IMG/VR virus record: IMGVR_UViG_3300026078_000017
Span: 62,001-126,000 of that record
Direction: 5' to 3' (one strand)
Length of the DNA stretch: 64,000 nucleotides
This document shows, one piece after another, positions 3,012 through 48,349 of this stretch. Position 1 is the first letter of the stretch. Each line of letters starts with the position of its first letter. Position numbers and translations under genes: made by a program. The notes below the pieces were generated by a model. That model did no database searches. It saw nothing but the letters and a program-made list of their open reading frames with translations, and was not told where the DNA came from.

Positions 3012-4709
3012 ATGCCTTTTAGAGCAAGTCATAGCGCTGGTAGAGCTTCACTCATAACAACTTTAACCAATTTCGTTTCCACACGTTCTGGTATTTTGCT
3101 TGACTCCCAATTTGGTACTGTTTTTGAAACTGGTCAAAGATGTACTTCCTGGACACCTCGTACAGGTGGTTCTGCTTTCACGGCTGCATCCGCAAGTACA
3201 GCTCGTCCAACACTAACCAATGGAAACATGGTTTTTGATGGCGTTGCCAATGTCATGAAGGGAAGCACCGGTTTCTTTGCTGGTACTCTTGGTTGGACTT
3301 GTGTTGTCGTTGGTAAAGCCACAGGTGGTGGCACAGAAAGCTACCTCGTTAATGCTGGTGATGCTAGCAACTATCTAGGCATTTATTGTAGAAACACACC
3401 AGTTTTTGGTGGTGTCATCGTTGGTGCTGGACCAAAGGTAAACGAATACCAAAGTTACAAGGATAGTTCTGGTTGGGGTATTTATGCTGGTCGTGCCACA
3501 TACGCAAATGGCATAAATGCTGTCGCCCCACAAACACTAAATGGTACAACTTTGTTTGGTACTCTTCTTGGTGGCAGTCAAAGCGTGGCAACTGTCACGA
3601 TTCCTTCGACACCAGTTGCTCTTGGAGGCGTGAATGCCAGTGCTGGTACTTTTGCTGCAATGACAGCTCGCTTTATTGTGATGTTTCAAACAGCACTTAG
3701 CGATGCAGACTTAACCACTTTGACAACCTTGTTGATGCAGGTTTCTACTTCAAGAAAATACCAAATCAAAAACGCACCTTATACAGACACCGTTGTTCCA
3801 AATGCTACAAATCCAAACTATGACGTTGTCTCCGAGTTCGCACGTCTTATCTGTTCTACAGACGCAGATGAAATCCAACTTCTGACAACTGCCGTTACTT
3901 CTACGCCTCAATATACCATCGGCTGGAGATTGAATGGCGGTGCAAGAACTGTTGTAGACGTAGGTACGATTGCTTATCCTTTGTTGTCTCTTGGTTCGCC
4001 AGGTACAACAAAAACTGTTGAAATAGAAGTTGGTCCGCAGTCTTTCAACATCACACAACCAAACGCAGGCAACTATCCTACAGAAGCCTGGGTGCCTCCA
4101 GGAAGAAGTCTTTCCTTCGTTCCACAGTCAGCACCAACCCGTAGACTTGTGGCTGTAGGCGACTCTATCTTCACTGGACAGGCTGCTACTCAATATCAAG
4201 CAAGTGGTTGTGCCATTCTTACCAGAAACACCTACCCAGGTCAGGTCACTTACCTAAGTGCTGGTGTTTATTCCTTGTTTGAACTTTCAACACAAAAATA
4301 TGCCAATGTAACAACTCTTGCAAATGCAATAAATGCCCTTGCTGATGGAACTGGAACAAACGAACTTTTGTTGCAGGTTTCTACGAATGATTTCGGCTTA
4401 AGTCAATGGTCAAGCGTTGCCAACTTCCAGACTGCTTATCAAAATCTCCTTACCTTGGTTGGCCCAAGTTTCTCAAAAGTCTGGATTCAAACCGCGGGTC
4501 AACGTACAGACATCCCATCCAACTCCTTTGGACAACTGATTTCTCAGTATAGAACTGCCGTGTCAGGTGCTGCTGTCGCAACAGGCATTGGAACTGTTAT
4601 TGACGGAACAACCTTGTACACACTTACAGGAAGTTCTGACAACTTGCATCCAGCCGCATCTGAACAAATCAACTACGCTGCTAACCTCAAAACAGCCATG
4701 GGTTTCTGA
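3012..4709 (+). CDS. LamG-like + C-terminal SGNH/GDSL esterase protein
   Basis: Start re-assigned from 2919 to ATG 3012 (MPFRASHSAGRAS, matching the previous gene's N-terminus). VAVGDSIFTG, STNDF and DNLHP motifs. Confidence 0.8.
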   Translation: MPFRASHSAGRASLITTLTNFVSTRSGILLDSQFGTVFETGQRCTSWTPRTGGSAFTAASASTARPTLTNGNMVFDGVANVMKGSTGFFAGTLGWTCVVVGKATGGGTESYLVNAGDASNYLGIYCRNTPVFGGVIVGAGPKVNEYQSYKDSSGWGIYAGRATYANGINAVAPQTLNGTTLFGTLLGGSQSVATVTIPSTPVALGGVNASAGTFAAMTARFIVMFQTALSDADLTTLTTLLMQVSTSRKYQIKNAPYTDTVVPNATNPNYDVVSEFARLICSTDADEIQLLTTAVTSTPQYTIGWRLNGGARTVVDVGTIAYPLLSLGSPGTTKTVEIEVGPQSFNITQPNAGNYPTEAWVPPGRSLSFVPQSAPTRRLVAVGDSIFTGQAATQYQASGCAILTRNTYPGQVTYLSAGVYSLFELSTQKYANVTTLANAINALADGTGTNELLLQVSTNDFGLSQWSSVANFQTAYQNLLTLVGPSFSKVWIQTAGQRTDIPSNSFGQLISQYRTAVSGAAVATGIGTVIDGTTLYTLTGSSDNLHPAASEQINYAANLKTAMGF

Positions 4710-32780: not shown

Positions 32781-32945
32781 CTATTTGGTAAAGGACTTCC
32801 TGAGAGGGATTACAACATTTTGTTCAAATTCGGTCAAAAGGTCACGGGTTGCTTTTTCGGCCAATTTTCTCTCTTCATCTGACATTTCGGACAAAAGTCT
32901 CTGATATTCAGGATTTTCAATAAGTTCCTTAAGAGTGTCTGACAT
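32781..32945 (-). CDS. small helical hypothetical protein (54 aa)
   Basis: Not in the track (under 60 aa). MSDTLKELIENPEYQRLLSEMSDEERKLAEKATRDLLTEFEQNVVIPLRKSFTK; TAATG overlap with the tape-measure stop; fills the gap exactly. Confidence 0.65.
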   Translation of the reverse strand: MSDTLKELIENPEYQRLLSEMSDEERKLAEKATRDLLTEFEQNVVIPLRKSFTK

Positions 32946-35900
32946 TATCTACCTCCACCACCTGGACGTGACATTATTCTAGAGTTTGGTCTCTCAACCA
33001 AAACTCGTTCCATTTCCTGTGCATCAATGTTGACAGTTACGTTCACGTCAATGTTAAAGTCTCTGTTACGGATTGTAATTTCTTCACTGTCACCAAGACC
33101 AAGTCTACCTGCAAGTGCCTTGAGAGACGTGTTGATGTTTACTGGTTGAATTGCACCAAGATCCGTTGCAATAGAGTTGACCTGTTCAACCATCGCAGAG
33201 ATATTTGTGCTAAGGTGTTGGAATGCCTCACTCTTGAGAACTTCAGCGTTTGCCTGAATGCCCGTTGCAAGGTCATTGAAGTCAATATCACGAATAACAT
33301 TCAAGGAACTGATGCCCTTGGAGATTTGTTCAAGTTTAGCTGCTGGATTACCTGCAATGTCAGGGATGTTGTTAAATGTTCCAACCATCTGTCTGAAGAA
33401 TGCAGGAAGAGAAGCTGGGTGTGCTGCGTCATCATAGAACAAACTAATAATAGTTCCAAGACGAGCAGTAATTTGTTCATATTGTCCTTGGGTACCTTCA
33501 CTCAAGCCATCATACAAAGACTTGAGGGCTGGAGGAAGGCTGACAACAGCTTCAATCATTCCCTTGATTGCATTAACACCAGAAATAAGGTTTGCTGCAT
33601 CACCACGAGAAAGACCAGTGAATAATCCCTTGGTGCTTTCAATCAAACTGGTTATGACATCTCTGATACCGTAAAGCATTGTGCCAACGATAGCTCTGAT
33701 TGTGCCGATTGCAGCTCCCTGGGACTCCGGAGAGACACCAGAAACCAATGTACCGAGTCCTGCCACTGTGTTACCAATCGTGGCAATAGCCTCAAATGCG
33801 GATTTTAGAACAGGGGCAAGTGTACTGAGACGACTTACGTCTCTTTCACTCAAACCAGAGACTTGAGCAACCATCGTTTGAATGAGAGTTGTCATCGAAG
33901 AAATAAGACCACCACTTCCACCTGTGAAAATGTTGGTGAGAAGAGTGTTGATAATGTCTGTTACTGCTGGAAGTCTTGCAGAAAGTTCTTCTGTAGACAA
34001 TCCTGAATATTGTTGATTGATGACAATCAACAGACTTCTGGACAAGTTGCCAATAATTTCCAACATGTGTCCAACAGCCTCAAAGCTTCTAAGGGCATTT
34101 TCGGAGAAACCTCCACCTGTTGCCAAGTTTTGGAACTGTTCAACGACAGCCTTCAGGATTCCCTTCAGGGAACTTCCAAGAACTGTCACGAACAAACTTA
34201 GACCATTTAGACGTTCATCTATATTTGAACCAAACAGAGAATTGTCTGCCTGAAGTAAACTGTCCGGAGGTTGAAGGTTCTTCAGGAGTTCTCCAATGCT
34301 TGTCATGATTCTTCCGAAGAGTTCAGCCTTCTGAAGTTGTTCTGGAGCAACTGCAAGAGAGTCAACCTGACGAATCACTCCCTTAACCAAGTCCATCATC
34401 TCATGACCCAAGGTTTCAACAGTCTTTCTAACCGCAGCCAAGGAGTCGATTTGTTGTTGGGCCGCATTTCCGGTAAACCAACTCCAAATAGAAGAGTGAG
34501 ACGTTGACTCAGAAATGCGAACAATCATTCCACCAAAATCACTTACAGCCGAAAGAACCGTTGTAAAAATAGAAAGTCTACGATCAATGTCTCCAGGAAT
34601 CGACATGTGACTGATGGACTCAATAATGTGGTTGATTTCCTCAATCATTGCTTCAGAGGTTGCAGCGATTGCGGCAATACCAGCAACAGCAGCAATAGCT
34701 CCAACACCAGAAGTTGCGATAAACAAAGCACCTACTGCTGTAGCAGCAATCAAAATACCTGCGGCAGCAGCAACGAAGATTCCGCCTGCTTCCATGGCCT
34801 GAACGGCATTATGAAGTTGTCTGTCATCAAATCCACTCAAGGACTCAACAGCATACACGATACCAGCAGTCATTGCGGCAGCAAAGAGACCAACTGCTGC
34901 CAAACCAATAAGAGCACCAGGCAAGCTACCTTGGATCAAGTTACCTGCTTGACTTACAAGAGCCACAGCTCCAGCAATTTCAATCATTACCAAACCAGCA
35001 GCACCAAGTACTGCGGCAGAACTCAACATTTGTGTGGGTGTGAGATGTCTTGCTCTCATAAGTTCTGCAAGACCCCAAATGCCCAAAACGATAGCTGCTA
35101 CACCGATCGCAATGACAGCACCAATTTGCAACATTCTGGGAATTACGGAAGCATTGGCAGTTGCAGAAGCAGCTTGTGCAGCAGCACCAGCTTCACCAGT
35201 TGCCACAGTTGCGGCAGTTGCTGCCTGGATAGCCTGAGGATTTGCCACCGAGCCAATGATGGACGTAAGACCACTCTGTGCAGCTTGTCTTACGGCAGTG
35301 CCTGCAAAGGCTTTTGTAAATGCCTCAATAAGACCCTTAGTCAAGGATCCTCCAACTGCACTTACCAAACCACCAATGAGGGCTCTACCAAAAGCAGGAC
35401 CAAACAACAACAAAGAAATTGCGCCTGCATGAGCCACAAGGAAGTCTCGTACTCTCGGCCAGATTTCTTGTTGCCACAAGTCCTCAAGAGCTGCCACAAG
35501 TGGCGGCCAAGCAGCTTTAATGGCTTCCAATATTGGTTGGAATAGTTCCATGATGAAAGACAAGGCACCTGAAGCTTCTGCTCCACCACCCAGACTCTTT
35601 CTTCCCGACAACAAGTCAGTTATAAGACGTATACCAGAAGTTATGCCCTTGGCAGCTTCTGTAATAAGTCCTGCGATAATAACGCTCATTGCCTTGGAGA
35701 ACTTTCTCACGCCATCCAAAATACCTCTGCCGGCTGCTGTTGAGCCATTGAAGTAATTCCAGAACATTGTCTTGAGACGTTCCATCAAGTTCTTGAAGGA
35801 ATCTCTTCCTGAGGTGCTTGTGAGACTAGAAAAGAAGTCTCTGAAAATGGTACGAAGGCTCTTCGTCATTTCTCGGAAACGATTTCTGTCAAAAAGGTTG

Positions 35901-37522
35901 TCGAGTCCCTTCAGCACTTGCTGAATGCCAGGGAACATTTGTACGAATGCTTGACCAACAGATATACCTGCCAGATACGTTTGTCGCAAGGCCAAACGTA
36001 TGTCAATCATTAATTTTCGGAATTCCCTACTTCGTATTATCCCTCGTTCGAATCCTTGGAAGAATCTTTCAAAGAATCCTCCTGCACCCATACTACCGGA
36101 TTTAACCAAACGTTCAATAGCTCCAGCAATTTGCTGAAGAGCTTCTGCTTGGGTAAGTTGTGACTTACGAGCAGCATCAGATTTCTTTTTAACCTGCTCA
36201 TAACTCTGACTTTGGTTCTTTTGACTAAAGACAAGGTCCAGGGTACTGTCCTCCAAACCTGTCTGTTGTGCCAAAAGGGCACGCTCTTGACGTGTCATGT
36301 TTTCAACAGAACGTCCTGCGGCAAAGAATGCCTTTCGGATTTGTTCTGTTCGTTCTGCGGGGTCCTGTGCCTTAAGAAGTTGCAAGGCATCAAGCTGAAG
36401 ACCAAATGCCTGAGTAAGTTGAGAAGCTGACCTTGCAGCATCCTCAAAGTTGTCAAACTGGTCAATAACGCCAAGAAGACCCTTGACTTCAACACCAAGT
36501 CTACGGGCATAGACAGAAATCTGAGTAAGAATCTGAGGAGCCATACCTCCAAAGTGTTGGAAGTCGTTCATCATGTCGCCCACGTCCTGAGAGACTTGGG
36601 CGGCGGATTGTCCGAACTCATCCGCCAGTTGAACAGAATAGTTGGCTATTTGCCGGGTGACTTCGGTTAGGTCTTGTCCTAGAGCTTGCGCTCGTATACC
36701 AACGGCTTTTTGTCCTTCCTCCGTTAAGTGCAGACCTTTAAAGTATGCACCCACCGCCTCACCGTTCTTCATGAACTGTGTAGCAAGGTTGGCAAAGGTA
36801 TTTCCCATGTTTTTGGCGAACTCGGCTATGGTTTTCAGTCGTTCTGCCAATCTACCAAAGGTTCTCCATACACTGAGTCCCGTGTTGGCAAGTTCACCCT
36901 TCATTCCTCTAGAAATGTCAATAATGGCATTTGCAGAAGACTTTCTAAGGTCACCGAACTCCTTACGGATGTCCTCAAGAGCCTGACGAAGACTGTTGTC
37001 ACCTCCACCCTGACTTGCGAAGTTGATGAGGTTTCCAAGGATTTTGAACGGGAAGCTAATAACCGACAGAGCCAGTTGTCCCAGAGCTTCTATGGCTGTG
37101 GAGGTCGTAGACCCGAATAGTTGTAGAGCATGTGAGGTTCCACTTATACCTGCCGTAAATCCTTCCCAAATACCACTAAAGGCAGCAAACTGTGGCAAAA
37201 GCTTCACAGCCTGTTTTAAGGAACCCACAAGTCCTTGACCGCTTGTAAGGCTTTTTTTGAGAGAATTGGTGAAATTCTTCATTGTGTTGCCACCACCGAG
37301 TTTATCAGCGGCTTTAGCAGCATCTTCAAGGGTTTTTTGTTGTTTTTCGAGATTTCCAACAGTATTGCTGGAAGTGTTGTTCATTTGAGACAGGGAGTCA
37401 GAAATTTGACGCACTATGTCAAGCTGACTTTTCAGCGACTTAGTCTGAGCTTCCACAAGAGAATTCATGTCCTCTTGCAGTTGTTTCAATTGTTCTGCGA
37501 TTTTAATATTGTCTACAGCCAC
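32945..37522 (-). CDS. tail tape measure protein
   Basis: 1525 aa, helical, Ala/Gly/Leu-rich with hydrophobic mid-segments; lies between the chaperone and baseplate genes. Confidence 0.85.
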   Translation of the reverse strand: MAVDNIKIAEQLKQLQEDMNSLVEAQTKSLKSQLDIVRQISDSLSQMNNTSSNTVGNLEKQQKTLEDAAKAADKLGGGNTMKNFTNSLKKSLTSGQGLVGSLKQAVKLLPQFAAFSGIWEGFTAGISGTSHALQLFGSTTSTAIEALGQLALSVISFPFKILGNLINFASQGGGDNSLRQALEDIRKEFGDLRKSSANAIIDISRGMKGELANTGLSVWRTFGRLAERLKTIAEFAKNMGNTFANLATQFMKNGEAVGAYFKGLHLTEEGQKAVGIRAQALGQDLTEVTRQIANYSVQLADEFGQSAAQVSQDVGDMMNDFQHFGGMAPQILTQISVYARRLGVEVKGLLGVIDQFDNFEDAARSASQLTQAFGLQLDALQLLKAQDPAERTEQIRKAFFAAGRSVENMTRQERALLAQQTGLEDSTLDLVFSQKNQSQSYEQVKKKSDAARKSQLTQAEALQQIAGAIERLVKSGSMGAGGFFERFFQGFERGIIRSREFRKLMIDIRLALRQTYLAGISVGQAFVQMFPGIQQVLKGLDNLFDRNRFREMTKSLRTIFRDFFSSLTSTSGRDSFKNLMERLKTMFWNYFNGSTAAGRGILDGVRKFSKAMSVIIAGLITEAAKGITSGIRLITDLLSGRKSLGGGAEASGALSFIMELFQPILEAIKAAWPPLVAALEDLWQQEIWPRVRDFLVAHAGAISLLLFGPAFGRALIGGLVSAVGGSLTKGLIEAFTKAFAGTAVRQAAQSGLTSIIGSVANPQAIQAATAATVATGEAGAAAQAASATANASVIPRMLQIGAVIAIGVAAIVLGIWGLAELMRARHLTPTQMLSSAAVLGAAGLVMIEIAGAVALVSQAGNLIQGSLPGALIGLAAVGLFAAAMTAGIVYAVESLSGFDDRQLHNAVQAMEAGGIFVAAAAGILIAATAVGALFIATSGVGAIAAVAGIAAIAATSEAMIEEINHIIESISHMSIPGDIDRRLSIFTTVLSAVSDFGGMIVRISESTSHSSIWSWFTGNAAQQQIDSLAAVRKTVETLGHEMMDLVKGVIRQVDSLAVAPEQLQKAELFGRIMTSIGELLKNLQPPDSLLQADNSLFGSNIDERLNGLSLFVTVLGSSLKGILKAVVEQFQNLATGGGFSENALRSFEAVGHMLEIIGNLSRSLLIVINQQYSGLSTEELSARLPAVTDIINTLLTNIFTGGSGGLISSMTTLIQTMVAQVSGLSERDVSRLSTLAPVLKSAFEAIATIGNTVAGLGTLVSGVSPESQGAAIGTIRAIVGTMLYGIRDVITSLIESTKGLFTGLSRGDAANLISGVNAIKGMIEAVVSLPPALKSLYDGLSEGTQGQYEQITARLGTIISLFYDDAAHPASLPAFFRQMVGTFNNIPDIAGNPAAKLEQISKGISSLNVIRDIDFNDLATGIQANAEVLKSEAFQHLSTNISAMVEQVNSIATDLGAIQPVNINTSLKALAGRLGLGDSEEITIRNRDFNIDVNVTVNIDAQEMERVLVERPNSRIMSRPGGGGR

Positions 37523-37571
37523 AGACTAATCCAATCGACTCATAATTACATCTCAGTTGGAGTTTAGAGCC

Positions 37572-37925
37572 ATGTTAAAGAAAAAACCAGAAACCCTTGA
37601 TGAAATAATCCTCTCAGAAGCCAAAAAGGCCAAGGCTAGAGAAACCCTTATTACTGAAGGCAGTCTTTCTACAACTGGAAAGATTTTGTTTGCCTCGGTC
37701 GCTGCATACCTCGCTGGCAAGATAGCCTCTGGGTCATTTTTAAAGCTCCGTGGCAAGCCTGAGGAGCTTCGTGCAATGGCAGACGCTATCGTGGCTTCCA
37801 AAGCCTTCCTGGACGAACTGAAGCGTCCTGGAGCCACCATTGACAGCGTTATTGACAAAATGAACCTAAAGAACGTCACAACTGCCAAGTTTAAGCAGAT
37901 TACCGGTCAAAACTGGCCATTATAA
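37572..37925 (+). CDS. hypothetical protein with capsid-type leader
   Basis: ATG at 37572 preferred; TLDEIILSE...LITE leader; C-terminal TGQNWPL. Confidence 0.7.
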   Translation: MLKKKPETLDEIILSEAKKAKARETLITEGSLSTTGKILFASVAAYLAGKIASGSFLKLRGKPEELRAMADAIVASKAFLDELKRPGATIDSVIDKMNLKNVTTAKFKQITGQNWPL

Positions 37926-37941: not shown

Positions 37942-38502
37942 ATGTCAGACTCAAAACTGCAATATAAGAAGATTCGAGAAAAGAAGTTCAAGCTCCTTGA
38001 TAAAGAGTCTGGCTATGACAAGCACATTGTTTTAAAGTCCTTCGAAATGCCAAATGGCATGACAGAGAACTTCTTTATCGACGACAACAAGAGTTCTGTG
38101 CAGATTTTTGCCATAACCGATGATGAACAAGTCTTGTGTGTCAAACAGTTCCGAGCTGGACCCGAGAAGGTTCAACTGGAAATCCCAGGTGGCGGATTGG
38201 AAGACGGGGAAAATCCACAAGAGGCAGCAGCAAGAGAACTTTTGGAAGAAACCGGGTATGCCGGTTCTGTACCTGTGTTTCTAGCTGCCTTGGACTATTC
38301 CCCATATTCTTCTGGCAAGAGATACATGTACATGTGTACCGAGTGCCAAAAGAAAAAGGAACTCGACTTGGATCCAAATGAGTTCCTTGAAGTAGTTCTC
38401 GTTCCCTTGGAACAATTTAGAAAACTAATGATTGAAGGCAAAGTAAGAGGTCATGACACAGCCTACATGGGGCTTGACAGACTTCATCGTCTGTCATTTT
38501 AG
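37942..38502 (+). CDS. NUDIX hydrolase (ADP-ribose pyrophosphatase-like)
   Basis: Nudix box GGGLEDGENPQEAAARELLEETG; KQFR...LEIPGG typical of ADPRase/NudF. Confidence 0.9.
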   Translation: MSDSKLQYKKIREKKFKLLDKESGYDKHIVLKSFEMPNGMTENFFIDDNKSSVQIFAITDDEQVLCVKQFRAGPEKVQLEIPGGGLEDGENPQEAAARELLEETGYAGSVPVFLAALDYSPYSSGKRYMYMCTECQKKKELDLDPNEFLEVVLVPLEQFRKLMIEGKVRGHDTAYMGLDRLHRLSF

Positions 38503-38778
38503 AATTGTCGACCTCTAAGTTTTGCTGGTACCTGTGGGCGAAGTTTGCCCTGAAGAGACCTAATGTCTGGAGTGTTGTGATGAGCTGCCTTTGATGGAGG
38601 TTCTTTACCTTCCTTGGAAGCTTTCTCAAATTCTTCGTTCAGTCGTTTAATCAACCATCTTCGGTATGTAAGAGGGAAGTTGTAAAACGTCACCCAATCC
38701 ATACCGAAGTAGTAAGATAGCGCAAAGAAGGGCTCAAGAATTAGGAGTTCACGATTTTCTGGCGTTGGGCCAAAAAAA
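38499..38778 (-). CDS. tail chaperone C-terminal extension (gpT-like), probably reached by frameshift
   Basis: The open frame crosses the T7 run at the end of the chaperone: FFGPTPENRELLILEPFFALSYYFGMDW...RRWLIKRL; its first ATG (38702) has no clear SD. Confidence 0.6.
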
Positions 38779-39630
38779 GCTCGGACCGAGTGGCAACGGC
38801 ATGACCTCCCAGTGTTCACAGTTCTTACATGTGAAGTCAAACTTCATGTCAATACCTGGTTCAATTTCATCCATGTACTGACGAAGTGCAATGGAGTCCT
38901 TTGCTGGCATGAAGGAAATGAACTGAGCAAGTTTCGTCTTGTCCTCAATACCTCCAACCGACACAATCGAGTGAAGCAAACGAGTTGTGACAATGTTGTC
39001 ATTTTGAATGCCACGCTTTTTCTTAGCTTCAAGCGTTGCCAAAATCTCTTCTTCTTCCTTGCCTGTCAAGAACTTAAAAATAACTTCCTTCTTGGTTTGT
39101 GGTAAAGTAAAGGAAAACTTGTTGACGCCTGCCTCAATAGGAGATGCCTTAAGGTCCTTCACTTCAAGACCATTGAGGTCTACAGAAATCTCGTTCTTCT
39201 GTTCGCACTTTGGACAATCCATGGAGCCGGCATACTCAGCACCATAACCAAGAATACGAATGGCAATCATGAGGGCGTTTCTGTCGCCACCAATGAGGCT
39301 CTGTACGTCCACGCCATCTGTAACGATACAGGACTTGATAAGTTCGGAAATAACGGTACCCTTACGAATAAGGGCGCGAGACATAAGAATGTCTTCTTCT
39401 CTTGTGGTCATACCACGGATGTCCACAGTCTGTTGCATGTGTAGTGGACTATCAAGAGGATAAATCACACCACCGCTTGGAAGTGGTACTGCGGAGACTG
39501 GAATATCCAACCCGAAGTCACGCCTCATGACCTCTTCTTTTGAAATCGAATTTGCTGAAGATGCTCTTTCAGCAGCTTCTCTTGCTGCAAAAATTGCGTT
39601 CTTCGTCTTGCGGTCATCTTCATCTGACAT
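38749..39630 (-). CDS. tail assembly chaperone / T4 gp26-like baseplate hub assembly protein
   Basis: VPLPSGG, MTTREEDIL, GDRNALMIAIR, CPKC...CKNC, ending LGPSFFWP; upstream of the tape measure gene. Confidence 0.75.
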   Translation of the reverse strand: MSDEDDRKTKNAIFAAREAAERASSANSISKEEVMRRDFGLDIPVSAVPLPSGGVIYPLDSPLHMQQTVDIRGMTTREEDILMSRALIRKGTVISELIKSCIVTDGVDVQSLIGGDRNALMIAIRILGYGAEYAGSMDCPKCEQKNEISVDLNGLEVKDLKASPIEAGVNKFSFTLPQTKKEVIFKFLTGKEEEEILATLEAKKKRGIQNDNIVTTRLLHSIVSVGGIEDKTKLAQFISFMPAKDSIALRQYMDEIEPGIDMKFDFTCKNCEHWEVMPLPLGPSFFWPNARKS

Positions 39631-39711: not shown

Positions 39712-40014
39712 TTACAACTTAGACATGTCTAGCATGTCTTCTGTAGAAGGTGTTGGTTGTTCTGGTTTTGGGTTATGGCTTTTGTGAAGTTCAAGGGTTG
39801 CAACAGCGGATTTAAGAAGAGCAAGTGCTTTTTCAGGATCTCCACCGGCTCCTGCCATGGCGGTCATAATCAAGCTCCAGCGTCCTTTAAGTTTGCCTTG
39901 AGCCTGAAGGAGTTTCATTTTCTCCCAATCAATACCGAACATTCCGGCTTCCTGAAGCTTTTTGTCAACTGCCTCTCTAATGAGAGACCTAAGTTCTGTA
40001 AGGGAAATTTCCAT
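39712..40014 (-). CDS. hypothetical protein with capsid-type leader
   Basis: MEISLTELRSLIREAVDKKLQE N-terminus. Confidence 0.7.
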   Translation of the reverse strand: MEISLTELRSLIREAVDKKLQEAGMFGIDWEKMKLLQAQGKLKGRWSLIMTAMAGAGGDPEKALALLKSAVATLELHKSHNPKPEQPTPSTEDMLDMSKL

Positions 40015-40040: not shown

Positions 40041-40529
40041 TCAGTACTGAAGAACAGCGTTATCAAAGCGAATGGTAAGTGCGATTTCTGTCTGATCAGA
40101 ACCTTCGTAGGTAATATCGTTAAAGTTAGCTTCCTGTACCCAGGCGCCCTTGATATCCCAAAGCTGAATGACTGTACCAACTGGATCAAGCATTTTAATC
40201 TGAATGTCACGCTTGTAGAAGTCAGCGTAACCAGAACGACCAGTTACCGACTCGAAGCAAAGACGAATCCACTCCATAACCTGCTGTGCACCCGATGGAG
40301 CAATGGCATCATGGAGAGTTACAGCCATCGTACCGAAGGTTGTCTTACCAGCAACATAACGTGTGGAGTTAATCCAGTTAATTGCCACTTCTTCTGTCGT
40401 GATCGTTGGACGAGCAGCGGTTTTTACCAAAAATGCGTCAACGCCTTCAATCGCAAGCAAGAACTGACGTTTTGCAATCGGTTGAAACTTCGTTGGAAGC
40501 ATCTCTGTTACATCTAAGGTTGTTGCCAT
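40041..40529 (-). CDS. tail tube protein (T4 gp19-like)
   Basis: PIAKRQFLL, AARPTI, YVAGKTTF, QQVMEW, ADFYKRDI, WDIKGAW, LTIRFD; 162 aa downstream of the sheaths. Confidence 0.88.
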   Translation of the reverse strand: MATTLDVTEMLPTKFQPIAKRQFLLAIEGVDAFLVKTAARPTITTEEVAINWINSTRYVAGKTTFGTMAVTLHDAIAPSGAQQVMEWIRLCFESVTGRSGYADFYKRDIQIKMLDPVGTVIQLWDIKGAWVQEANFNDITYEGSDQTEIALTIRFDNAVLQY

Positions 40530-42252: not shown

Positions 42253-45252
42253 TCAAGTAATGTTGAAGTTGCCTTGGTTCGTAAGTACGAATGTAAGGTC
42301 CAAGAACTCAAGGGAACGAACTGGGACAATGAAAATCTTACCACGAATGGTCTTGTTCTCAATATCCACCTGTGTGGTTGTGGTTGTGTCAATCTTCACA
42401 AGGAAGGACTCAACACCCTGCTGATCTTGAACCTTCTTCAAGATAGGCTGGCAAAGTTGCTGGAATCTTGCAAGGGTGGATGCACGGTTTGGTTCAAACA
42501 AGAATCTGTTTGCAACCTTACGGATTTGACGACGAAGGCTAAGAAGAAGACGACGTACGTTGACTCTTTCAAGCGCACTTGGCGTTGCAAGAAGCGTCTT
42601 CTGACCCCAAACAACCGTACCCTCGGAACCTGGGAAGGCGACGATTGGGTTAATGTTGACTTGGTAAAGGTCATCCATGTTTCCACGGGAAAGTTTCACA
42701 GCAGCCTCTTGAGTTGTGTCAAGAGCACCACGAGAGAAACCTGCTGGAGCAAACCATGGGAAGGCAACAGCGTCGTTCTTGGAGAATGCACCAAGGACAG
42801 CAACAGAAGGAGCAACCTCACGAACTACGTTCGAAAGCTGATCTCTCAAAATCACGTTAGGGAAGTATGCAGCACCGAAGGAGCTGTTAAGACCACGACC
42901 TGTGAAGTTGTTGACAGTATTTCTTACAGAAATGATTTGGTCTTGTCCACCAACCATTGTGTGAGCCTGCGAGTCAAGTTCTTCAATGTCCATCAAATAA
43001 ATGGCATCGAAACGATTTTCTGCGACTGCAAGAGCCTGGTCAGTAAGGTATCTGTGACGGATACCTGGAAGTGTCATAATTTGAATGTCAAGCTCAGATG
43101 TGTCGTTCATGATGGACAAGGAACGCTCATAAGCCTTAACGGTTGGACCAGAAGACAACAAACGGTTACCGTTGTTGAGTTCTTGAACAACTGCTGTGTT
43201 GCTCATGTACTGACACTCACGATCGAAGATTCTTACACCGTCAAATCCGCCTTCAACAAAGAAGGAGAACTTGGCTACCTGGCGAACCGTTGGGTCTGCA
43301 AGGTCATCAACTGTCAAAGCACGGGTAAGACCAACCGTGTCGGTTGTGATGCCGCCAGCACGAACGTAGGTCCAGTTCTGGAGGTTGTTCATGTCTGGGG
43401 AGTTGCTTGCCGCAATGTAAGGTACCTTGATTTTCTCAAGGGAGAACAAGTTGTTGTTAAATCTGTCAGCATCCAAGATGCCGTTGCTTGCTGTGTCAGC
43501 CACGCCCTCATTGTCTCTTACAACAACGCTCTGCCAGTCTGTGTGGAAGTTTGGCAAATATTTTGCAAACGAACAAACGGAAGTGTCTGGAACAAGCGAT
43601 GCATTCGACTCAGAGATGGAAATAACCTTTTCGAACTGAACACCCCAATAAAGAGCACGGTCACCAATTTGGTTACCAGATGCACCACGGGAGAGGTTTC
43701 TACGCATTGGAACTGGTGGTTGTGCAAGGTTGAACCATGGGTTCGAAGCAACCAAGTTCGTTGCGTCTGCATAACCGCCCATTGGGCCTGTACCAGAAAC
43801 CATCAAGTGTTGATTTCCTCTGAAGCCTACTGGAAGTGCTGTTGGGTCAACGTTTGCGTCATTTACGCCAGAAGCAACTTCAACACGAATGTACTTGGAG
43901 TTATTTGGGTAGTCGCCATCAACAACAAGCTTCTGTTCGCCATTTGCGGCTTCGAAGTTATAGAATGTGTGGTAGTTACCAATAACACGTGCAACGTAGT
44001 TGTCAGCATTTGGATCAAGGGACAAACCTCTCCACTGCTCAAGAACTGCACGGCTCTTGTCTGTGTCGGTTCCATCACGAACAAGCAAGTCGAACTTACC
44101 ATAAAGGTAGGTGTCGCTGAGGCTTGGCGAGATATTTTCGATGGAGATTTTTACTTTACCAGTTGTGTAAGCACCGTCATCCAAGGTGTGAACCTTGAAC
44201 AAGTTTTGTGGCTTGCCACCAAAGAGCTGGGATGTTACCCATGGGCTCTTTGCTGTTCTAAATCTGTCTTCGAAGTTTTCAAAGTTAGGAGCTACGGTTG
44301 AACCAGAGTTTCTTGTCTGGGAACCTGTGAGCAAGAATGCTGCTCTTTCAAGACCGGCCGAACTGGAGACGATTGCACCAGCGCCTGTTACGACTGCAAC
44401 TGATGGGTAAATGTCCCAGGAGTTGTAGAGAACGTAACCAGCCTGTTCAAGGCGGAATGGGTCTTTGTTGAAAATGCTACCGAAGTAGTTTGGTGCTGTT
44501 GGGTCAAAGGATGCCGTAACAACGTTTGGATAAGAGAGGTCCAAACCACGATGACCATTAAGGAGCATAACGAACTCTTGTTTGGAGTTCGCAAGATTTA
44601 CAGAACCTGTCTGACCACCACGGATGTTTGCACCAGCGGCTGCAAGAGTTGTGGATGGAGCTGAGTTTGTACCAACCGAGTCTGAAAGTGTCAAAACGAC
44701 ACCGGATGCTGCCATGATCATGCCACGGACAACTGGAAGACCAACACCAACTCTACCTGCCTCAGAGAACCATGTCGAGCCATTGGACTCGGACATGAAA
44801 GCACCGATCATGTACATTCTGCCAAGAGGACCGACATCGGTACCCGAGGATGTAACTGCATAAGCATTGTAGCCAAGAGCACCAGAAAGGACGCTTTGTG
44901 GCTGTTGATCACCGACTACGAAACCTGCGTTTGTAACCTTGCCCTTGTTGTTTCCAGCCGTTGTACGTGGGTCACCAGTACCAATACCAAGAACACGAAG
45001 GAAGGTTGCTGCCTGAGCATTTCTAAGCCACTCAGATACTGCTAAAGGACCATTTACTGCGCCGTCTGTTGTCTTACCGAACACAACAATAAAGTCTTGT
45101 GTCGTTGGAACAGTCATTGGCACGAATGCTGGTCCTTTCTGAGCAGAACCAACAACACCAGCAGGGATACCCACTGGTACAAGTGCTGTCGGACCAGTCA
45201 AGTTTATTGTTCTTGCTGATACGCCCGCTGATTTGAAGTTTATCTCAGTCAT
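42253..45252 (-). CDS. contractile tail sheath protein (copy 2)
   Basis: GVVGSAQKGPAFVP, PWFAPAGFSRG, INPIVAFP, VWGQKTL, RVNVRRLL, FEPN. Confidence 0.93.
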   Translation of the reverse strand: MTEINFKSAGVSARTINLTGPTALVPVGIPAGVVGSAQKGPAFVPMTVPTTQDFIVVFGKTTDGAVNGPLAVSEWLRNAQAATFLRVLGIGTGDPRTTAGNNKGKVTNAGFVVGDQQPQSVLSGALGYNAYAVTSSGTDVGPLGRMYMIGAFMSESNGSTWFSEAGRVGVGLPVVRGMIMAASGVVLTLSDSVGTNSAPSTTLAAAGANIRGGQTGSVNLANSKQEFVMLLNGHRGLDLSYPNVVTASFDPTAPNYFGSIFNKDPFRLEQAGYVLYNSWDIYPSVAVVTGAGAIVSSSAGLERAAFLLTGSQTRNSGSTVAPNFENFEDRFRTAKSPWVTSQLFGGKPQNLFKVHTLDDGAYTTGKVKISIENISPSLSDTYLYGKFDLLVRDGTDTDKSRAVLEQWRGLSLDPNADNYVARVIGNYHTFYNFEAANGEQKLVVDGDYPNNSKYIRVEVASGVNDANVDPTALPVGFRGNQHLMVSGTGPMGGYADATNLVASNPWFNLAQPPVPMRRNLSRGASGNQIGDRALYWGVQFEKVISISESNASLVPDTSVCSFAKYLPNFHTDWQSVVVRDNEGVADTASNGILDADRFNNNLFSLEKIKVPYIAASNSPDMNNLQNWTYVRAGGITTDTVGLTRALTVDDLADPTVRQVAKFSFFVEGGFDGVRIFDRECQYMSNTAVVQELNNGNRLLSSGPTVKAYERSLSIMNDTSELDIQIMTLPGIRHRYLTDQALAVAENRFDAIYLMDIEELDSQAHTMVGGQDQIISVRNTVNNFTGRGLNSSFGAAYFPNVILRDQLSNVVREVAPSVAVLGAFSKNDAVAFPWFAPAGFSRGALDTTQEAAVKLSRGNMDDLYQVNINPIVAFPGSEGTVVWGQKTLLATPSALERVNVRRLLLSLRRQIRKVANRFLFEPNRASTLARFQQLCQPILKKVQDQQGVESFLVKIDTTTTTQVDIENKTIRGKIFIVPVRSLEFLDLTFVLTNQGNFNIT

Positions 45253-45310: not shown

Positions 45311-48300
45311 TCAGACGAACTGAATACCGCTATTTGTGATAATGAAATCGATAGCAATGAACTCAGCAGCGCGAACTGGAACCACCTTAATGGAGGCATT
45401 CATTCTGTTTGCCAAAACATCTTGGGAGGTGTTGTTACGTTCGTCACAGATGATTTCGAATCTCTCGATACCATCGCGGATTTGAACAGTTGACAAAATA
45501 GGCTTAACCAAGTCAACGAATCTCTGGCGAAGTGCCGGAGTAAGCTGTTCGAAGATAAGGCTATTACCAGCATTTACGATTTGTTGCTTAATGCTGATAA
45601 TCATTCTGTTCACGTTGATGCTCTGAAGGGCAGTTCCTGCCTGTTCAAGCGTCTGTTGGGAGAAGATTACAAATCCCTCATTTGGGAACTTGGTGATTGG
45701 GTTAATTCTAACTGCGTAAAGTCTTTCACGCTCAGGCTGGTTGACCTTGCTTGAGGTGTTGGTTACGAAGTCAAGGGCTGCACGATTGAAGCCGGCAGGC
45801 GCAAACCATGGGTAAGCTACCTTGTCGTTAAATCCGATTGCTGCAAGAGCAGCAACAGAAGCTGGAACCGTTACCTTGCGGTTGTTGTTGACAGTGTCTT
45901 CCAAAACGATATTTGGGAAATATGCAGCAACGAAGTTGTTGTCAACTGCACGAGACTCAAACATGTCTGCCGTTCTGTTATTGGAAGCGTATCTTGTGGT
46001 GTCACCATCGAAAATACGAATGGAGTTGGAGTCGTAGTAAGGAACGTCCATCAAGTACTCAGCCAAACCGTAGTTTTGTACTGCTGTACCAATGTAGTCC
46101 GTTACAAGAGGGTCTCTCTGACCTGGAACTGCCAAAATGTTGATGTTGCTTACGAATGGATCCGTAATAAGAGCACCTGCCACACGGTAAGATGCAACAG
46201 CGTTGTTCTTTCTGGATGTACCCGACTGATTTACTGCGAAACCGGTTGGGATATACGCAGAATTTGCGCCACCGCCAGTTTCGGCAGATGTACCCTTGTC
46301 GGTCATGCGTGCCTGCTCTTTGTCAAGGATGTTCAAACCATCAAAACCACCATAAAGAACTGTTGTGAACTTGGAGTAGTTTGAGAAACGGTTGAATGTC
46401 GTAGCGTCACCGTTCTGCAACAATGTTGCAAGAGTAATACGGTTCATGTACGTGTCGTTGATCTTGTAGTCACTTGGGTTTGGCTGACCATTTCTGATAT
46501 AAGCCGCTTCCTTCATGTGTTGGTCTGCGGATGCAGTCAAGTCTGTGATTGCAGCGTTACCAAAGGCAACTCTTGCAAGAGAGAACTTGTTATTGTTGAA
46601 TGCGTCTGCCTGAGAGCCCGTTACAAGCACGTCAAGCTTCTTGATACCAACGAACTGGGTGTATGCACCAACAAGGTGATTGATTTCGCCATTGACGTTG
46701 GTGTTCAACACGTCATTGTTATTTCTGGTAACCTTAACACCCCAGTAAAGGCGTGCGTCAGCAATTTCAGTTGGACCTGGTGTACCGATTGGACCGATTG
46801 CAGAAGTGATTGCACCACGAGTAACCTTAAATCTGAAAGGAAGTGGTGGAACGATTGCGCCAAGCAATCTTGCTTGTGTGGAACCAACCGTACCCGAGGC
46901 TGCCAATCTCGTAAGAGCTGGAATCGAGGAAGTTGTGTCCGTAAGAAGTGGGTTTGTGTCGATTGTGTTTACGCCACGGTAACCGAATGGAAGGCATTTT
47001 GCTGGAATGACCTTGTCTTCAACACCCTTGGACATGTTCACACGGATGTAGTTCGAACGGCTTGGGTACTTACCAGTCTTTACCAAACGACGGTCGTCTT
47101 CATTTTCAACGTCAAAGTTGAAGAAGACCTTTGTGTTACCAATGACACGACCAACATAGTTGTCCGAGTCTGGGTTAAGGTTGCAGTTGTTGAACTGTTC
47201 CAAAATCTGGATGTTTACGTCATCGTCATCAAACGAGCGAACCAACACTGCGAACGTTCCGTAAGGATTTTTTGGATCTGTGGATGCCTGTACGTTTGCA
47301 ACAGATGCCTTGATTTTGCTATTGCTGTATGCGCCATCATCCAAGCTTTCAATCTGGAAGAGGTCGTACTCTGCAAGACCGAAAGGCTGTGAAATGATCA
47401 TTGGGGTTGCTGGGGTTGTGAATCTTGTGTCGAAACGACCAAAGGCATTTCTGAATACAAGAGAAGTGTCACCAGACGTCTGAGACGTGTTGTCAGAACC
47501 GGATGCAATGCACACGGAAACAGAGCTTGTAACAACCGAAGCAATTTCGTTATCTACAGCGAAATCAGCATAAAGCAAGTGCTTTTCGGCACCAAACTTG
47601 ATTGGATCACGGTTGAAGACCTTAGCGAAATAATCCTTGGAACTTGGGTCAAAGGAAGCTGTGAAAATCTTGATGCCAGTGTTGCCATCGGCTGTACCGA
47701 AAGAACTACCGGCAGAACTCGAAATAACCACCTTAATCTTACCATTGGTATCTGGGGTTGCAAGGTCGTCAGTAAGATTTGAGAAAGACTGGTTGGTGTC
47801 GAGAATCATAATTCTCGTGTCGCTTGCAGCAAACAAAATACCACGAACCAAGTTTACTTCATTAGAAGAACCTGTCGTGAAGAAGGAACTGTTGTCAGAG
47901 AACATTGGGAAACCGGCGACTTCTGTGCCAGTTACAACGTGTCTTGCTGTGATGAACTGAACCGAGTGATTGTGACGATTGTCAACGCCAGGGTTTACCT
48001 GGGAACCACTAAGCTTGAAACCTGCGTTGAGTACAGTACCCTTTGTACGGGTTGCATCCATGTCTGAAGATGTTTCGTTTGCACCTGCACCCAAAGTACG
48101 GATGAAGGTAAGAGCAAACTTGTTCTTCAAAAAGAGATTAACACCGTATGGTGCTGGTAATTTGGAATCAAGCGTACCGAATTTCGTGTTGAAATCTGCG
48201 AAAGAACCAACTGTGGTTGGAACGAAAGCGGGACCTTTTTGGGAGGTTCCGATTACGCCAGCCGGGATACCAGTTGGACTCTGTACTTCGACAGTAAGAT

Positions 48301-48349
48301 CGATTTCTCTGTCGAAAAATCCGGGTGCTTTAAAGATTTGTTCTGCCAT
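45311..48349 (-). CDS. contractile tail sheath protein (copy 1)
   Basis: FKAPGFFDREIDLT, GVIGTSQKGPAFVP, PWFAPAGFNRA, INPITKFP, FEQL. Confidence 0.92.
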   Translation of the reverse strand: MAEQIFKAPGFFDREIDLTVEVQSPTGIPAGVIGTSQKGPAFVPTTVGSFADFNTKFGTLDSKLPAPYGVNLFLKNKFALTFIRTLGAGANETSSDMDATRTKGTVLNAGFKLSGSQVNPGVDNRHNHSVQFITARHVVTGTEVAGFPMFSDNSSFFTTGSSNEVNLVRGILFAASDTRIMILDTNQSFSNLTDDLATPDTNGKIKVVISSSAGSSFGTADGNTGIKIFTASFDPSSKDYFAKVFNRDPIKFGAEKHLLYADFAVDNEIASVVTSSVSVCIASGSDNTSQTSGDTSLVFRNAFGRFDTRFTTPATPMIISQPFGLAEYDLFQIESLDDGAYSNSKIKASVANVQASTDPKNPYGTFAVLVRSFDDDDVNIQILEQFNNCNLNPDSDNYVGRVIGNTKVFFNFDVENEDDRRLVKTGKYPSRSNYIRVNMSKGVEDKVIPAKCLPFGYRGVNTIDTNPLLTDTTSSIPALTRLAASGTVGSTQARLLGAIVPPLPFRFKVTRGAITSAIGPIGTPGPTEIADARLYWGVKVTRNNNDVLNTNVNGEINHLVGAYTQFVGIKKLDVLVTGSQADAFNNNKFSLARVAFGNAAITDLTASADQHMKEAAYIRNGQPNPSDYKINDTYMNRITLATLLQNGDATTFNRFSNYSKFTTVLYGGFDGLNILDKEQARMTDKGTSAETGGGANSAYIPTGFAVNQSGTSRKNNAVASYRVAGALITDPFVSNINILAVPGQRDPLVTDYIGTAVQNYGLAEYLMDVPYYDSNSIRIFDGDTTRYASNNRTADMFESRAVDNNFVAAYFPNIVLEDTVNNNRKVTVPASVAALAAIGFNDKVAYPWFAPAGFNRAALDFVTNTSSKVNQPERERLYAVRINPITKFPNEGFVIFSQQTLEQAGTALQSINVNRMIISIKQQIVNAGNSLIFEQLTPALRQRFVDLVKPILSTVQIRDGIERFEIICDERNNTSQDVLANRMNASIKVVPVRAAEFIAIDFIITNSGIQFV

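What the first reader, a model, noticed from the sequence alone, without database searches (positions are those of the whole stretch)
38499..39630. Probable +1 programmed frameshift (U7) giving a G/GT-type tail chaperone pair
Seen: the chaperone ends AGC TTT TTT TGG CCC (SFFWP; A7 at plus 38772-38778). The +1 frame reads TTT TTT GGC CCA and stays open about 90 codons to 38499, with protein-like sequence well before its first ATG. Both tRNA-Phe could re-pair perfectly after a +1 slip. Known: G/GT frameshifts upstream of tape-measure genes are widespread but mostly -1 (lambda, P2), with -2 in Mu. A +1 event would be the unusual variant.
Basis: partly seen in the sequence, partly recalled or inferred. 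Interest (0 to 1): 0.65.

Follow-up and report, generated by a model that had tools for sequence, protein, structure and literature searches.

The report
Conserved +1 frameshift in tail chaperone
A jumbo phage's tail-assembly chaperone gene (a relative of phage T4 gene 26) almost certainly makes a second, longer protein by a programmed +1 ribosomal slip on a run of seven U's, and the same slip site and extension recur in dozens of related uncultured phages.

Summary
The 293-aa minus-strand ORF 38749-39630 ends ...SFFWPNARKS*. The +1 frame is open for 92 codons from the T7 run (38772-38778) to 38499.

The ORF belongs to the T4 gp26 family (PF12322). It lies between the tail tube gene and the tape-measure gene of a 320-kb phage. 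The top three fold matches of its N-terminal domain include two tail assembly chaperones.

Of 70 non-identical relatives (48-88% identity), 67 keep a slip-competent site: TTT TTT TGG, TTT CTT TGG, TTC TTT TGG or TTT CTA T. All 67 also keep a conserved ~90-codon +1 extension. Codon periodicity switches from frame 0 to +1 exactly at the site. Most relatives have no start codon that could serve the extension.

In the three exceptions the T-run is broken. Each instead carries a second, tandem gp26-like gene with the extension fused in frame, at the spacing a +1 slip (not -2) predicts.

More distant family members reach the homologous extension by -1 on T_TTT_TTC. T4 itself has no extension.

Verdict: a programmed +1 frameshift giving a G/GT-type chaperone pair, supported by comparative evidence only. 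None of the 14 annotated phage records I examined annotates it, and I found no description in the searchable literature. No protein or RNA data exist.

The parts
38749..39630 (-). 'G' ORF: 293-aa protein of the T4 gp26 family (PF12322, phrog_150 'baseplate hub'). It is read here as the tail assembly chaperone and ends 7 codons after the slip site at TGA 38751-38749.
   Evidence: PF12322, 66 bits against a cut-off of 24.5; 1333 relatives. AF2 model pLDDT 85. Top fold matches are the HK97 TAC 2ob9 (Z 6.0), 3fgx (5.7) and YqbN 3klu (5.7); the next unrelated row scores 3.6.
38767..38778 (-). Slip site core TTT TTT TGG CCC. The U7 run is at 38772-38778. Proposed event: the P-site tRNA-Phe moves from UUU (38775-38773) to UUU (38774-38772), so the A site reads GGC instead of UGG.
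   Evidence: All 12 positions are near-invariant in 65 unique relatives, including wobble positions (information 1.55-2.0 bits against 0.03-0.8 for neighbouring wobble positions). Variants are listed.
38499..38777 (-). 'T' extension in the +1 frame: 92 codons (FFGPTPENRELLILEPFF...KLRGRQF) plus TAA. The predicted G-T fusion is 376 aa (residues 1-284 of G plus these 92).
   Evidence: 38-sequence alignment, 57% mean column identity, conserved from its first residue. AF2 model: three helices followed by a disordered basic tail, pLDDT 77. Single copy in the 320-kb genome.
38749..38840 (-). Overlap window in which the frame change must occur in this phage: from the upstream +1-frame stop (just before 38840) to the 0-frame stop at 38749. 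Relatives narrow it to between 1 codon before the first Phe codon and 6-9 codons after it.
   Evidence: L071 has a TGA in the +1 frame ending one codon before the first Phe codon; the 0-frame stop lies 6-9 codons after the first Phe codon in all loci.
40041..40529 (-). Tail tube protein gene (gp19-like), upstream in the same orientation.
   Evidence: phrog_4542, 3.6e-30. (PF06841, below the cut-off).
32945..37522 (-). Probable tape measure protein gene (1525 aa), downstream in the same orientation.
   Evidence: phrog_1272 tail length tape measure, 3.3e-07. Relatives have tube, gp26-like gene, extension and an annotated tape measure in a row.
37942..38502 (+). NUDIX hydrolase gene on the opposite strand. 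It converges on the extension and overlaps it by 4 nt. It is not part of the frameshift system, but it separates the chaperone from the tape measure gene.
   Evidence: A convergent gene of similar size follows the extension in relatives L005, L006, L008, L012, L015 and L017.

Best explanation
Gene 38749-39630 (-) encodes the tail assembly chaperone of a T4-type contractile tail and is a member of the gp26 family. Most ribosomes terminate at TGA 38749 and make the 293-aa 'G' form.

A fraction of ribosomes slip +1 on U_UUU_UGG. The peptidyl-tRNA-Phe re-pairs from UUU to the overlapping UUU while the A site waits at UGG. The ribosome then reads GGC and continues for 90 more codons, giving a 376-aa 'GT' form with the junction ...LGPSFF-GPTPENR...

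By analogy with lambda gpG/gpGT, both forms would coat the tape measure protein through the shared G part. The extension is a small three-helix domain with a basic tail ending in a conserved RRF-like motif, and it would recruit another tail component.

Shown here: the site, its conservation, the frame switch in conservation, and the existence of natural in-frame G-T genes. Inferred: that the ribosome (not RNA polymerase) slips, the efficiency, and every binding function.
For: Anatomy.

Family and position: PF12322 at 66 bits; tail tube upstream and tape measure downstream; the order tube, gp26-like gene, extension, tape measure in cultured phages.

Fold: of 48,161 chains, the top three matches are the HK97 tail assembly chaperone 2ob9 (Z 6.0, 83 residues), 3fgx (5.7) and prophage YqbN 3klu (5.7). 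Unrelated rows start at Z 3.6.

Conservation: all 120 best protein relatives stop 1-12 residues after F[FL]WP, which reads FFWP in 118 of them, and none is a fused ~376-aa form. 67 of 70 non-identical loci keep a slip-competent site and a ~90-codon +1 ORF. TTT is strongly preferred at the site although TTT and TTC are used about equally elsewhere. The three-base periodicity of conservation shifts from frame 0 to +1 at the site.

No independent start: 42 of 70 loci have no start codon in the +1 frame between its upstream stop and the site.

Natural control: L031, L049 and L035 have broken runs (TTT TTC TGG or TTC TTC TGG) and no extension. Each has a second tandem gp26-like gene with the extension in frame, with junction ..HSFFSLSSDYRE.. 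and the same spacing as the +1 product.

+1 rather than -2 or transcriptional slippage: the variants TTC TTT TGG (three separate origins on the quick tree) and TTT CTT TGG (prfB-like CUU_U) keep the YUU_U element but not a long T run.

No second copy of G or T lies elsewhere in the genome.
Against: There is no protein, ribosome-profiling or RNA evidence. Only DNA metagenome runs hold this sequence.

No known +1 stimulator was found. The A-site codon is a sense codon (UGG) at an ordinary frequency (11.9 per 1000). The phage itself encodes tRNA-Trp. There is no conserved Shine-Dalgarno-like element 3 nt upstream and no conserved RNA structure.

One relative (L072, TTT CTA TGG) and L004 (TTT CTA TTC) fit only a slip one codon earlier (UUU_C), so the exact slipping codon is not uniform.

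Fold Z-scores of 5.7-6.0 are moderate. The extension's partner is unknown; the complex test with the tube protein gave no verdict. The loci are related, so counts are not independent events.
Confidence: 0.85

Rival explanations
1. A -2 ribosomal frameshift on the U7 run (as in phage Mu) reaches the same frame and gives ...SFFFGPTPENR, with one extra Phe.
For: The -2 and +1 frames are the same frame. In the window's T7 run, tRNA-Phe could re-pair perfectly two bases back.
Against: In TTC TTT TGG relatives (L050, L052, L056, L057, L073, L084) a -2 move from UUU lands on UCU. The in-frame paralogues have FF, not FFF, with the same spacing from the CxxC motif to the LEPFF motif as the +1 product.
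Confidence: 0.05
2. Transcriptional slippage: RNA polymerase drops one U on the T7/A7 run, producing an mRNA subpopulation in which G and T are in frame.
For: Homopolymer runs can cause polymerase slippage. One distant relative (RsoM2USA) has a T9 run at the site.
Against: Ten relatives have TTT CTT T and seven have TTC TTT T (runs of 3-4 T) and still keep the extension. So a long run is not what is conserved; the YUU_U element is. Seven is short for efficient slippage (my own knowledge, not tested here).
Confidence: 0.05
3. Two separate genes: the extension is translated on its own, from ATG 38702, from TTG 38840, or by re-initiation after the TGA.
For: An ATG exists at 38702, and Met at that position is common in relatives. 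GenBank records annotate the second ORF as a separate small hypothetical protein in several phages.
Against: The 25 residues upstream of that Met are as conserved as the rest. 42 of 70 relatives have no start codon between the upstream +1 stop and the site. Some relatives lack Met there (for example the YYGGF.. group). The in-frame fused paralogues show that the domain works attached to a G-like body.
Confidence: 0.04
4. Assembly or sequencing error in a homopolymer: the real gene is one continuous ORF.
For: Homopolymer length errors are common in some sequencing chemistries.
Against: The same frame arrangement appears in about 80 independent metagenome contigs, in 120 of 120 protein relatives and in isolate genomes. 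This includes sites with no homopolymer (TTT CTT TGG).
Confidence: 0.01

Closest known systems
Lambda gpG/gpGT and the conserved tail-assembly-chaperone frameshift of long-tailed phages (Levin 1993; Xu, Hendrix and Duda 2004, as summarised in PMC5009743)
   Same: Two overlapping ORFs lie between the major tail/tube gene and the tape measure gene. The second ORF lacks its own start. A slippery run sits in a short overlap. The short and long products share an N-terminus. The N-terminal domain has a TAC-like fold (HK97 TAC is the top match).
   Different: The direction is +1 on U_UUU_UGG instead of -1 on G_GGA_AAG-type heptamers. The G part is about twice as long (293 aa, two domains joined by a four-Cys zinc ribbon). 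It belongs to Pfam PF12322 rather than to the named TAC families. In this clade an opposite-strand NUDIX gene and a 111-aa ORF sit between it and the tape measure gene.
Phage T4 gp26 (baseplate hub assembly protein; PF12322 'T4_baseplate')
   Same: Same Pfam family (66 bits). T4 gp26 also ends a few residues after a C-terminal CxxC...FF motif (..CPECGKTHAHVIRGLKEFFELL*).
   Different: T4 has no extension. Gene 25 follows directly, and neither alternative frame is open past the site. T4 instead makes a second product, 26', from an internal in-frame start. The review PMC5009743 states that G-T frameshifting is conserved in long-tailed phages 'except T4'.
E. coli prfB (RF2) +1 frameshift at CUU_UGA, and +1 shifting of tRNA-Phe at UUU-pyrimidine sites (the latter from my own knowledge)
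   Same: A single P-site tRNA slips forward one base onto an overlapping cognate or near-cognate codon. The TTT CTT TGG relatives carry exactly the CUU_U element of prfB.
   Different: The A-site codon is a sense codon (UGG), not a stop. No conserved Shine-Dalgarno-like stimulator lies 3 nt upstream. There is no autoregulatory logic.
Other gp26-family members with a -1 site: E. coli Asteriusvirus vB_Ec-M-J, Salmonella SD-6_S16, Pseudomonas PA5oct, Agrobacterium Atu_ph07, Xanthomonas XacN1, Ralstonia RsoM2USA
   Same: A homologous C-terminal Phe-Phe position, a 0-frame stop a few codons later, and a 55-90-codon extension with a similar helical, basic character.
   Different: The extension lies in the -1 frame and the site is the classical heptamer T_TTT_TTC (T7 in XacN1, T9 in RsoM2USA). 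None of the GenBank records I examined annotates it as a frameshift.
Archaeal myovirus HSTV-2 chaperone frameshift ('very likely +1', PMC5009743) and the Listeria phage PSA +1 frameshifts in capsid and tail genes
   Same: These are precedents for +1 recoding in tailed-virus structural modules.
   Different: They involve unrelated proteins and different sites (PSA uses CCC_UGA). I could not read the HSTV-2 paper, so its site was not compared.

Membership tests
G/GT-type tail assembly chaperone pair | The gene lies between the major tail/tube gene and the tape measure gene, in the same orientation. | tested here: met
   Tube 40041-40529, chaperone 38749-39630 and tape measure 32945-37522 are all on the minus strand. 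A NUDIX gene on the other strand and a 111-aa ORF intervene. Relatives have the three genes adjacent.
G/GT-type tail assembly chaperone pair | A second ORF overlaps the 3' end of the first in another frame, lacks its own start, and has a slippery sequence in the overlap. | tested here: met
G/GT-type tail assembly chaperone pair | The frameshift is -1 on an X_XXY_YYZ heptamer. | tested here: not met
   The extension is in the +1 frame and the -1 frame is closed. The review PMC5009743 also lists a very likely +1 case, and -2 is known in Mu, so -1 is typical rather than defining.
G/GT-type tail assembly chaperone pair | Both the short and the fused long protein are made, at a set ratio. | not testable with these tools
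   No RNA or protein data exist. Indirect support comes from three relatives that encode G and an in-frame G-T as two genes.
G/GT-type tail assembly chaperone pair | TAC fold of the G part. | tested here: inconclusive
   Top three of 48,161 chains are HK97 TAC 2ob9 (Z 6.0), 3fgx (Z 5.7) and YqbN 3klu (Z 5.7), covering residues 25-138. These stand clearly above the next unrelated row (3.6) but are moderate in absolute terms. Foldseek gives probability 0.47 for 2ob9.
G/GT-type tail assembly chaperone pair | G binds the tape measure protein, T binds the tail tube protein, and neither is in the virion. | not testable with these tools
   The one complex prediction (extension with tube protein) returned no verdict.
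T4 gp26 family (Pfam PF12322, T4_baseplate) | A match to the family profile above the curated threshold. | tested here: met
   PF12322: 4.4e-18, 66.2 bits against a cut-off of 24.5, profile positions 13-208 of 219. phrog_150: 9e-22. Direct profile-to-T4-gp26 comparison is weak (E 0.011).
prfB-type +1 programmed frameshift | A P-site codon that allows +1 re-pairing (CUU_U or UUU_U). | tested here: met
   UUU_U in the window. YUU_U in 66 of 67 relatives that have an extension.
prfB-type +1 programmed frameshift | A slow A site (stop or rare codon) and a Shine-Dalgarno-like stimulator 3 nt upstream. | tested here: not met
   The A site is UGG (11.9 per 1000 codons) and the phage encodes tRNA-Trp. 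No conserved purine-rich element lies upstream.

The most novel reading that the evidence does not exclude
The whole gp26 family (PF12322) is the long-missing G/GT-type tail assembly chaperone of T4-type contractile tails. Its conserved C-terminal Phe-Phe codons act as a universal slip site whose direction has switched between -1 (T_TTT_TTC) and +1 (UUU_UGG, CUU_UGG, UUU_C) during evolution. T4 is the exception that lost the extension. The +1 clade would then be a large natural series of sense-codon +1 frameshift sites that work without a stop codon, a Shine-Dalgarno element or RNA structure. Their efficiency might be tuned by the phage's own tRNA-Phe, tRNA-Trp and tRNA-Gly genes.
Probability: 0.45. 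Interest if true: 0.75.

Novelty: new variant of a known kind. Interest (0 to 1): 0.62.

Why it matters
Tail-chaperone frameshifting is one of the most conserved recoding events in viruses, and T4-type phages have been cited as the exception. This site ties the T4 gp26 family to that system and shows a +1 version conserved across a large clade of soil and freshwater jumbo phages. It comes with a built-in natural control: lineages that replaced the slip with a duplicated in-frame gene and then lost the T-run.

In practical terms, hundreds of jumbo-phage genomes mis-annotate the extension as a tiny hypothetical gene or miss it altogether. For the recoding field, it offers a family of +1 sites at a sense codon with no recognisable stimulator. 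Cultured relatives carrying +1 sites (Flavobacterium phage immuto, Microcystis phage Mel-JY01, Bacillus SP-15/HSE3) allow direct tests, and E. coli Asteriusvirus carries a -1 site for comparison.

Tried and rejected
- blastn of the region and tblastn of the extension against 50,697 phage records found nothing.
- Pfam and PHROGs found nothing for the extension.
- A profile of the G part against PDB sequences found nothing meaningful.
- hhalign of the extension profile against T4 gp51 found nothing.
- RNAalifold on 64 aligned sites gave no consensus structure. The window's own downstream fold is no better than shuffles (z -0.9 to +0.3).
- Complex prediction of the extension with the tail tube protein gave no verdict. 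It is not evidence either way.
- Sequencing-run search found only DNA metagenome contigs (rhizosphere, soil, freshwater) and no RNA. Read laying was therefore not run, because contigs cannot show slippage variants.
- A second 'CTT TGG' site with an open +1 frame elsewhere in the genome (C1:38822, minus strand) was examined and dropped. The frames involved do not look like real genes.
- TAG recoding, suggested by a tRNA with a CUA anticodon, was checked. The standard code already gives about 85% coding, and making TAG a sense codon gains no more than making TAA one. Both stops relevant here are TGA and TAA.
- The HSTV-2 paper could not be read.
- The careful tree did not finish, so only the quick tree is cited.
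Full report
**What is in the window**

On the minus strand, the ORF 38749-39630 encodes a 293-aa protein ending ...MPLPLGPSFFWPNARKS*. The DNA at its end reads AGC TTT TTT TGG CCC AAC GCC AGA AAA TCG TGA. The T7 run is at 38778-38772. The +1 frame reads GCT TTT TTT GGC CCA ACG and stays open for 92 codons, counted from the first Phe codon, to TAA at 38501-38499. Its first ATG is at 38702, 25 codons into the open frame.

**Context**

The window is part of a 320,479-bp virus record, estimated 81% complete, from a rhizosphere metagenome. The minus strand carries a contractile-tail module in this order:
- two tail sheath paralogues (45311-48349 and 42253-45252);
- two unknown ORFs;
- a tail tube gene (40041-40529, phrog_4542, 3.6e-30);
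- a 100-aa ORF;
- the gene in question;
- a 111-aa ORF;
- a 1525-aa protein matching tape measure phrog_1272.

A NUDIX gene on the plus strand (37942-38502) converges on the extension.

The 293-aa protein matches Pfam PF12322 'T4_baseplate', the T4 gp26 family, at 66 bits against a cut-off of 24.5. It also matches phrog_150 'baseplate hub'. The extension matches no family.

**Fold**

An AlphaFold2 model of the 293-aa protein has pLDDT 85. It was aligned to 48,161 representative PDB chains. The best matches were:

| Chain | Protein | Z | Model residues |
|---|---|---|---|
| 2ob9 | HK97 tail assembly chaperone | 6.0 | 37-133 (83 aligned) |
| 3fgx | uncharacterised Bacillus protein | 5.7 | 25-138 |
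| 3klu | YqbN | 5.7 | 42-130 |
| 5ir0 | Vibrio PICI-like element ORF19 | 5.0 | 169-258 (second domain) |

By my own knowledge, YqbN is the XkdN-type chaperone of a Bacillus prophage tail module. The next row scores 3.6. Foldseek also singled out 2ob9, with probability 0.47. Four invariant cysteines (C139, C142, C268, C271) form a zinc ribbon. The Z-scores are moderate, but the top matches include two tail assembly chaperones (one identified from my own knowledge), which fits the gene's position.

The extension is predicted as three helices (6-24, 28-33, 36-56) followed by a disordered basic tail (pLDDT 77).

**Conservation of the site**

The word search found 1333 relatives. The best 120 (51-87% identity, from contigs up to 461 kb) all end 1-12 residues after an F[FL]WP motif, which reads FFWP in 118 of them. 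None is a fused ~376-aa form.

Eighty IMG/VR loci at 48-77% identity were fetched. Including the window, L001 and L004, they give 70 non-identical genes. Of these, 67 have a +1 frame open for about 82-96 codons from the site, encoding a conserved protein: FFGLTPEDKE...LEPFFLL.YY.GM.W...YN.PV.YKRWLI.RI.KEI.K...PSKA.HHNTPD.RAL.GK.R...P.KLRRFT.

The site occurs in these forms (all rows):

| Site | Occurrence |
|---|---|
| TTT TTT TGG CCY | most loci |
| TTT CTT TGG | 13 rows, one clade |
| TTC TTT TGG | 7 rows, three places on the quick tree |
| TTT CTA TGG | L072 |
| TTT CTA TTC | L004 |

Phe codons elsewhere in these genes are TTT 364 and TTC 324. At the site, codon 1 is TTT in 63 of 70. Per-column information is 1.55-2.0 bits at all 12 core positions, including wobble positions. 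Neighbouring wobble positions score 0.03-0.8 bits. Upstream of the site, the weakly conserved position of each triplet is the third base of frame 0. A few codons downstream, it becomes the third base of the +1 frame. That switch is the signature of a change of reading frame at this point.

**No independent start**

In the +1 frame, the nearest upstream stop lies 1-10 codons before the first Phe codon in 48 of 70 loci. In L071 it ends one codon before the first Phe codon. The 0-frame stop lies 6-9 codons after the first Phe codon in all loci. In 42 of 70 loci there is no ATG, GTG or TTG between the upstream +1 stop and the site. The 25 residues before the window's first Met are conserved as protein. 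So initiation at 38702 or re-initiation after the TGA cannot explain the conserved coding.

**A natural control**

The three loci without an extension are L031 and L049 (TTT TTC TGG) and L035 (TTC TTC TGG). These are also the only ones whose second Phe codon is TTC. In each, the first gp26-like gene is followed by a second, diverged gp26-like gene of about 345-350 aa. That second gene carries the extension in frame...C..C.H.E....IPTNHSFFSLSSDYREMVFLEPFFLLGYYFGM...KLRRF*.

The spacing from the CxxC motif through FF to LEPFF is identical to that of the predicted +1 product of the window (...C..C.H.E....LPLGPSFFGPTPENRELLILEPFF...). A -2 product would have one extra Phe.

On the quick tree, the first genes of these three loci nest among T7-bearing loci (L008, L012, L015, L017) that have no second paralogue. 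The two different run-breaking changes suggest that the slippery run decayed at least twice once an in-frame GT gene existed. This shows that the G-T fusion is a real, selected protein, that G alone is also kept, and that the T-run is maintained only where it is needed.

**Mechanism**

The element common to 66 of the 67 loci that keep the extension is YUU_U followed by GG. A P-site tRNA-Phe (UUU) or tRNA-Leu (CUU) can move one base forward onto UUU. This is perfect re-pairing for Phe. For Leu it gives the G-U first-position pair used in prfB (CUU_U, discussed in PMC10885494).

L072 and L004 fit only a slip one codon earlier (UUU_C). So the slipping codon may be either Phe codon where both are possible.

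Other mechanisms are disfavoured:
- A -2 slip is disfavoured by the TTC TTT TGG variants and by the paralogue spacing.
- Transcriptional slippage is disfavoured because runs of 3-4 T suffice in 17 relatives.

No conserved RNA structure or upstream Shine-Dalgarno-like element was found. UGG is not rare (11.9 per 1000), and the phage encodes tRNA-Trp, tRNA-Phe and tRNA-Gly(GCC). What sets the efficiency is therefore unknown. The steps 'ribosome slips', 'low efficiency' and 'the extension recruits another tail protein' are inferences by analogy with lambda gpG/gpGT (PMC5009743).

**Wider family**

More distant gp26-family genes in cultured phages show the same architecture at the homologous Phe-Phe position:

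| Direction | Site | Phages |
|---|---|---|
| +1 | T7GG | Microcystis phage Mel-JY01 |
| +1 | TTT CTT TGG | Flavobacterium phage immuto |
| +1 | TTC TTT CGT | Streptococcus GXN1, Bacillus HSE3 |
| +1 | CTG TTT CAG | Streptomyces LuckySocke |
| +1 | TTT TTT CAC | Bacillus SP-15 |
| +1 | TTT TTT AGT | Listeria LIS04 |
| -1 | T_TTT_TTC | E. coli vB_Ec-M-J, Salmonella SD-6_S16, Pseudomonas PA5oct, Agrobacterium Atu_ph07 |
| -1 | T7 | Xanthomonas XacN1 |
| -1 | T9 | Ralstonia RsoM2USA |

None of these records annotates a joined CDS. The second ORF is either a small 'hypothetical protein' or absent.

T4 gp26 ends ...KEFFELL* at the same motif but has no extension. It is followed directly by gene 25 and has an internal in-frame start, 26'.

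**Literature**

The Atkins 2016 review states that G-T frameshifting is conserved among long-tailed phages 'except T4'. It also states that the archaeal myovirus HSTV-2 very likely uses +1 (PMC5009743). Searches combining gp26, tail assembly chaperone, frameshift, jumbo phage and PF12322 found no description of this site. The library covers only open-access papers and bioRxiv, so an earlier report cannot be excluded.

**Verdict**

This is a G/GT-type chaperone pair made by a +1 frameshift in a T4 gp26-family gene. It is conserved across a large clade of uncultured jumbo phages. A natural gene-duplication control is present, and -1 versions occur in sister lineages.

It is a new variant of a known kind, established here by comparative genomics only. 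Confidence that a programmed frameshift makes the fusion is 0.85. Confidence that it is +1 ribosomal, rather than -2 or transcriptional, is about 0.9, conditional on a frameshift occurring. Confidence in the chaperone function is about 0.7.

Noticed in passing
window 37942-38502 (+): A NUDIX hydrolase gene lies on the opposite strand. It converges on the chaperone extension and overlaps it by 4 nt, so it sits inside the tail module between the chaperone and the tape measure gene. A convergent gene of similar size follows the extension in relatives L005, L006, L008, L012, L015 and L017, so the arrangement is conserved in the clade.
   Followed up: partly
window 42253-45252 and 45311-48349 (-): Two tandem tail sheath paralogues of about 1000 aa each. 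Both match phrog_23 and phrog_10581.
   Followed up: no
G000:C1:139981-140057 (outside the window, same genome): The genome has 38 tRNA genes. One has a CUA anticodon (ARAGORN calls it tRNA-Pyl), which makes it a potential amber suppressor. The standard code already gives about 85% coding, and TAG-as-sense gains no more than TAA-as-sense, so there is no sign of genome-wide TAG recoding.
   Followed up: partly
L031 3385-4431; L049 1029-2075; L035 about 3445-4493: Three IMG/VR relatives carry a tandem second gp26-like gene with the extension fused in frame, and have lost the slippery run in the first gene. This is a natural replacement of a frameshift by a gene duplication.
   Followed up: yes
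L090 (Atu_ph07), L091 (PA5oct), L092 (vB_Ec-M-J), L097 (SD-6_S16), L093 (XacN1), L095 (RsoM2USA): Cultured jumbo phages have an unannotated -1 site (T_TTT_TTC, T7 or T9) at the end of their 'baseplate hub' gene, with a 74-91-codon stop-to-stop frame in -1. The E. coli, Salmonella and Pseudomonas phages would be easy experimental systems.
   Followed up: partly
window 39712-40014 (-) and 37553-37888 (-): Two small ORFs (100 and 111 aa) flank the chaperone gene within the tail module. Neither matches Pfam or PHROGs.
   Followed up: no
L085 3803-4429 (T4 gene 26): T4 gp26 ends with the same ..EFF.. motif three residues before its stop, but has no extension in either alternative frame. Its second product, 26', comes from an internal in-frame start. 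This may be a different way of making two related proteins.
   Followed up: partly
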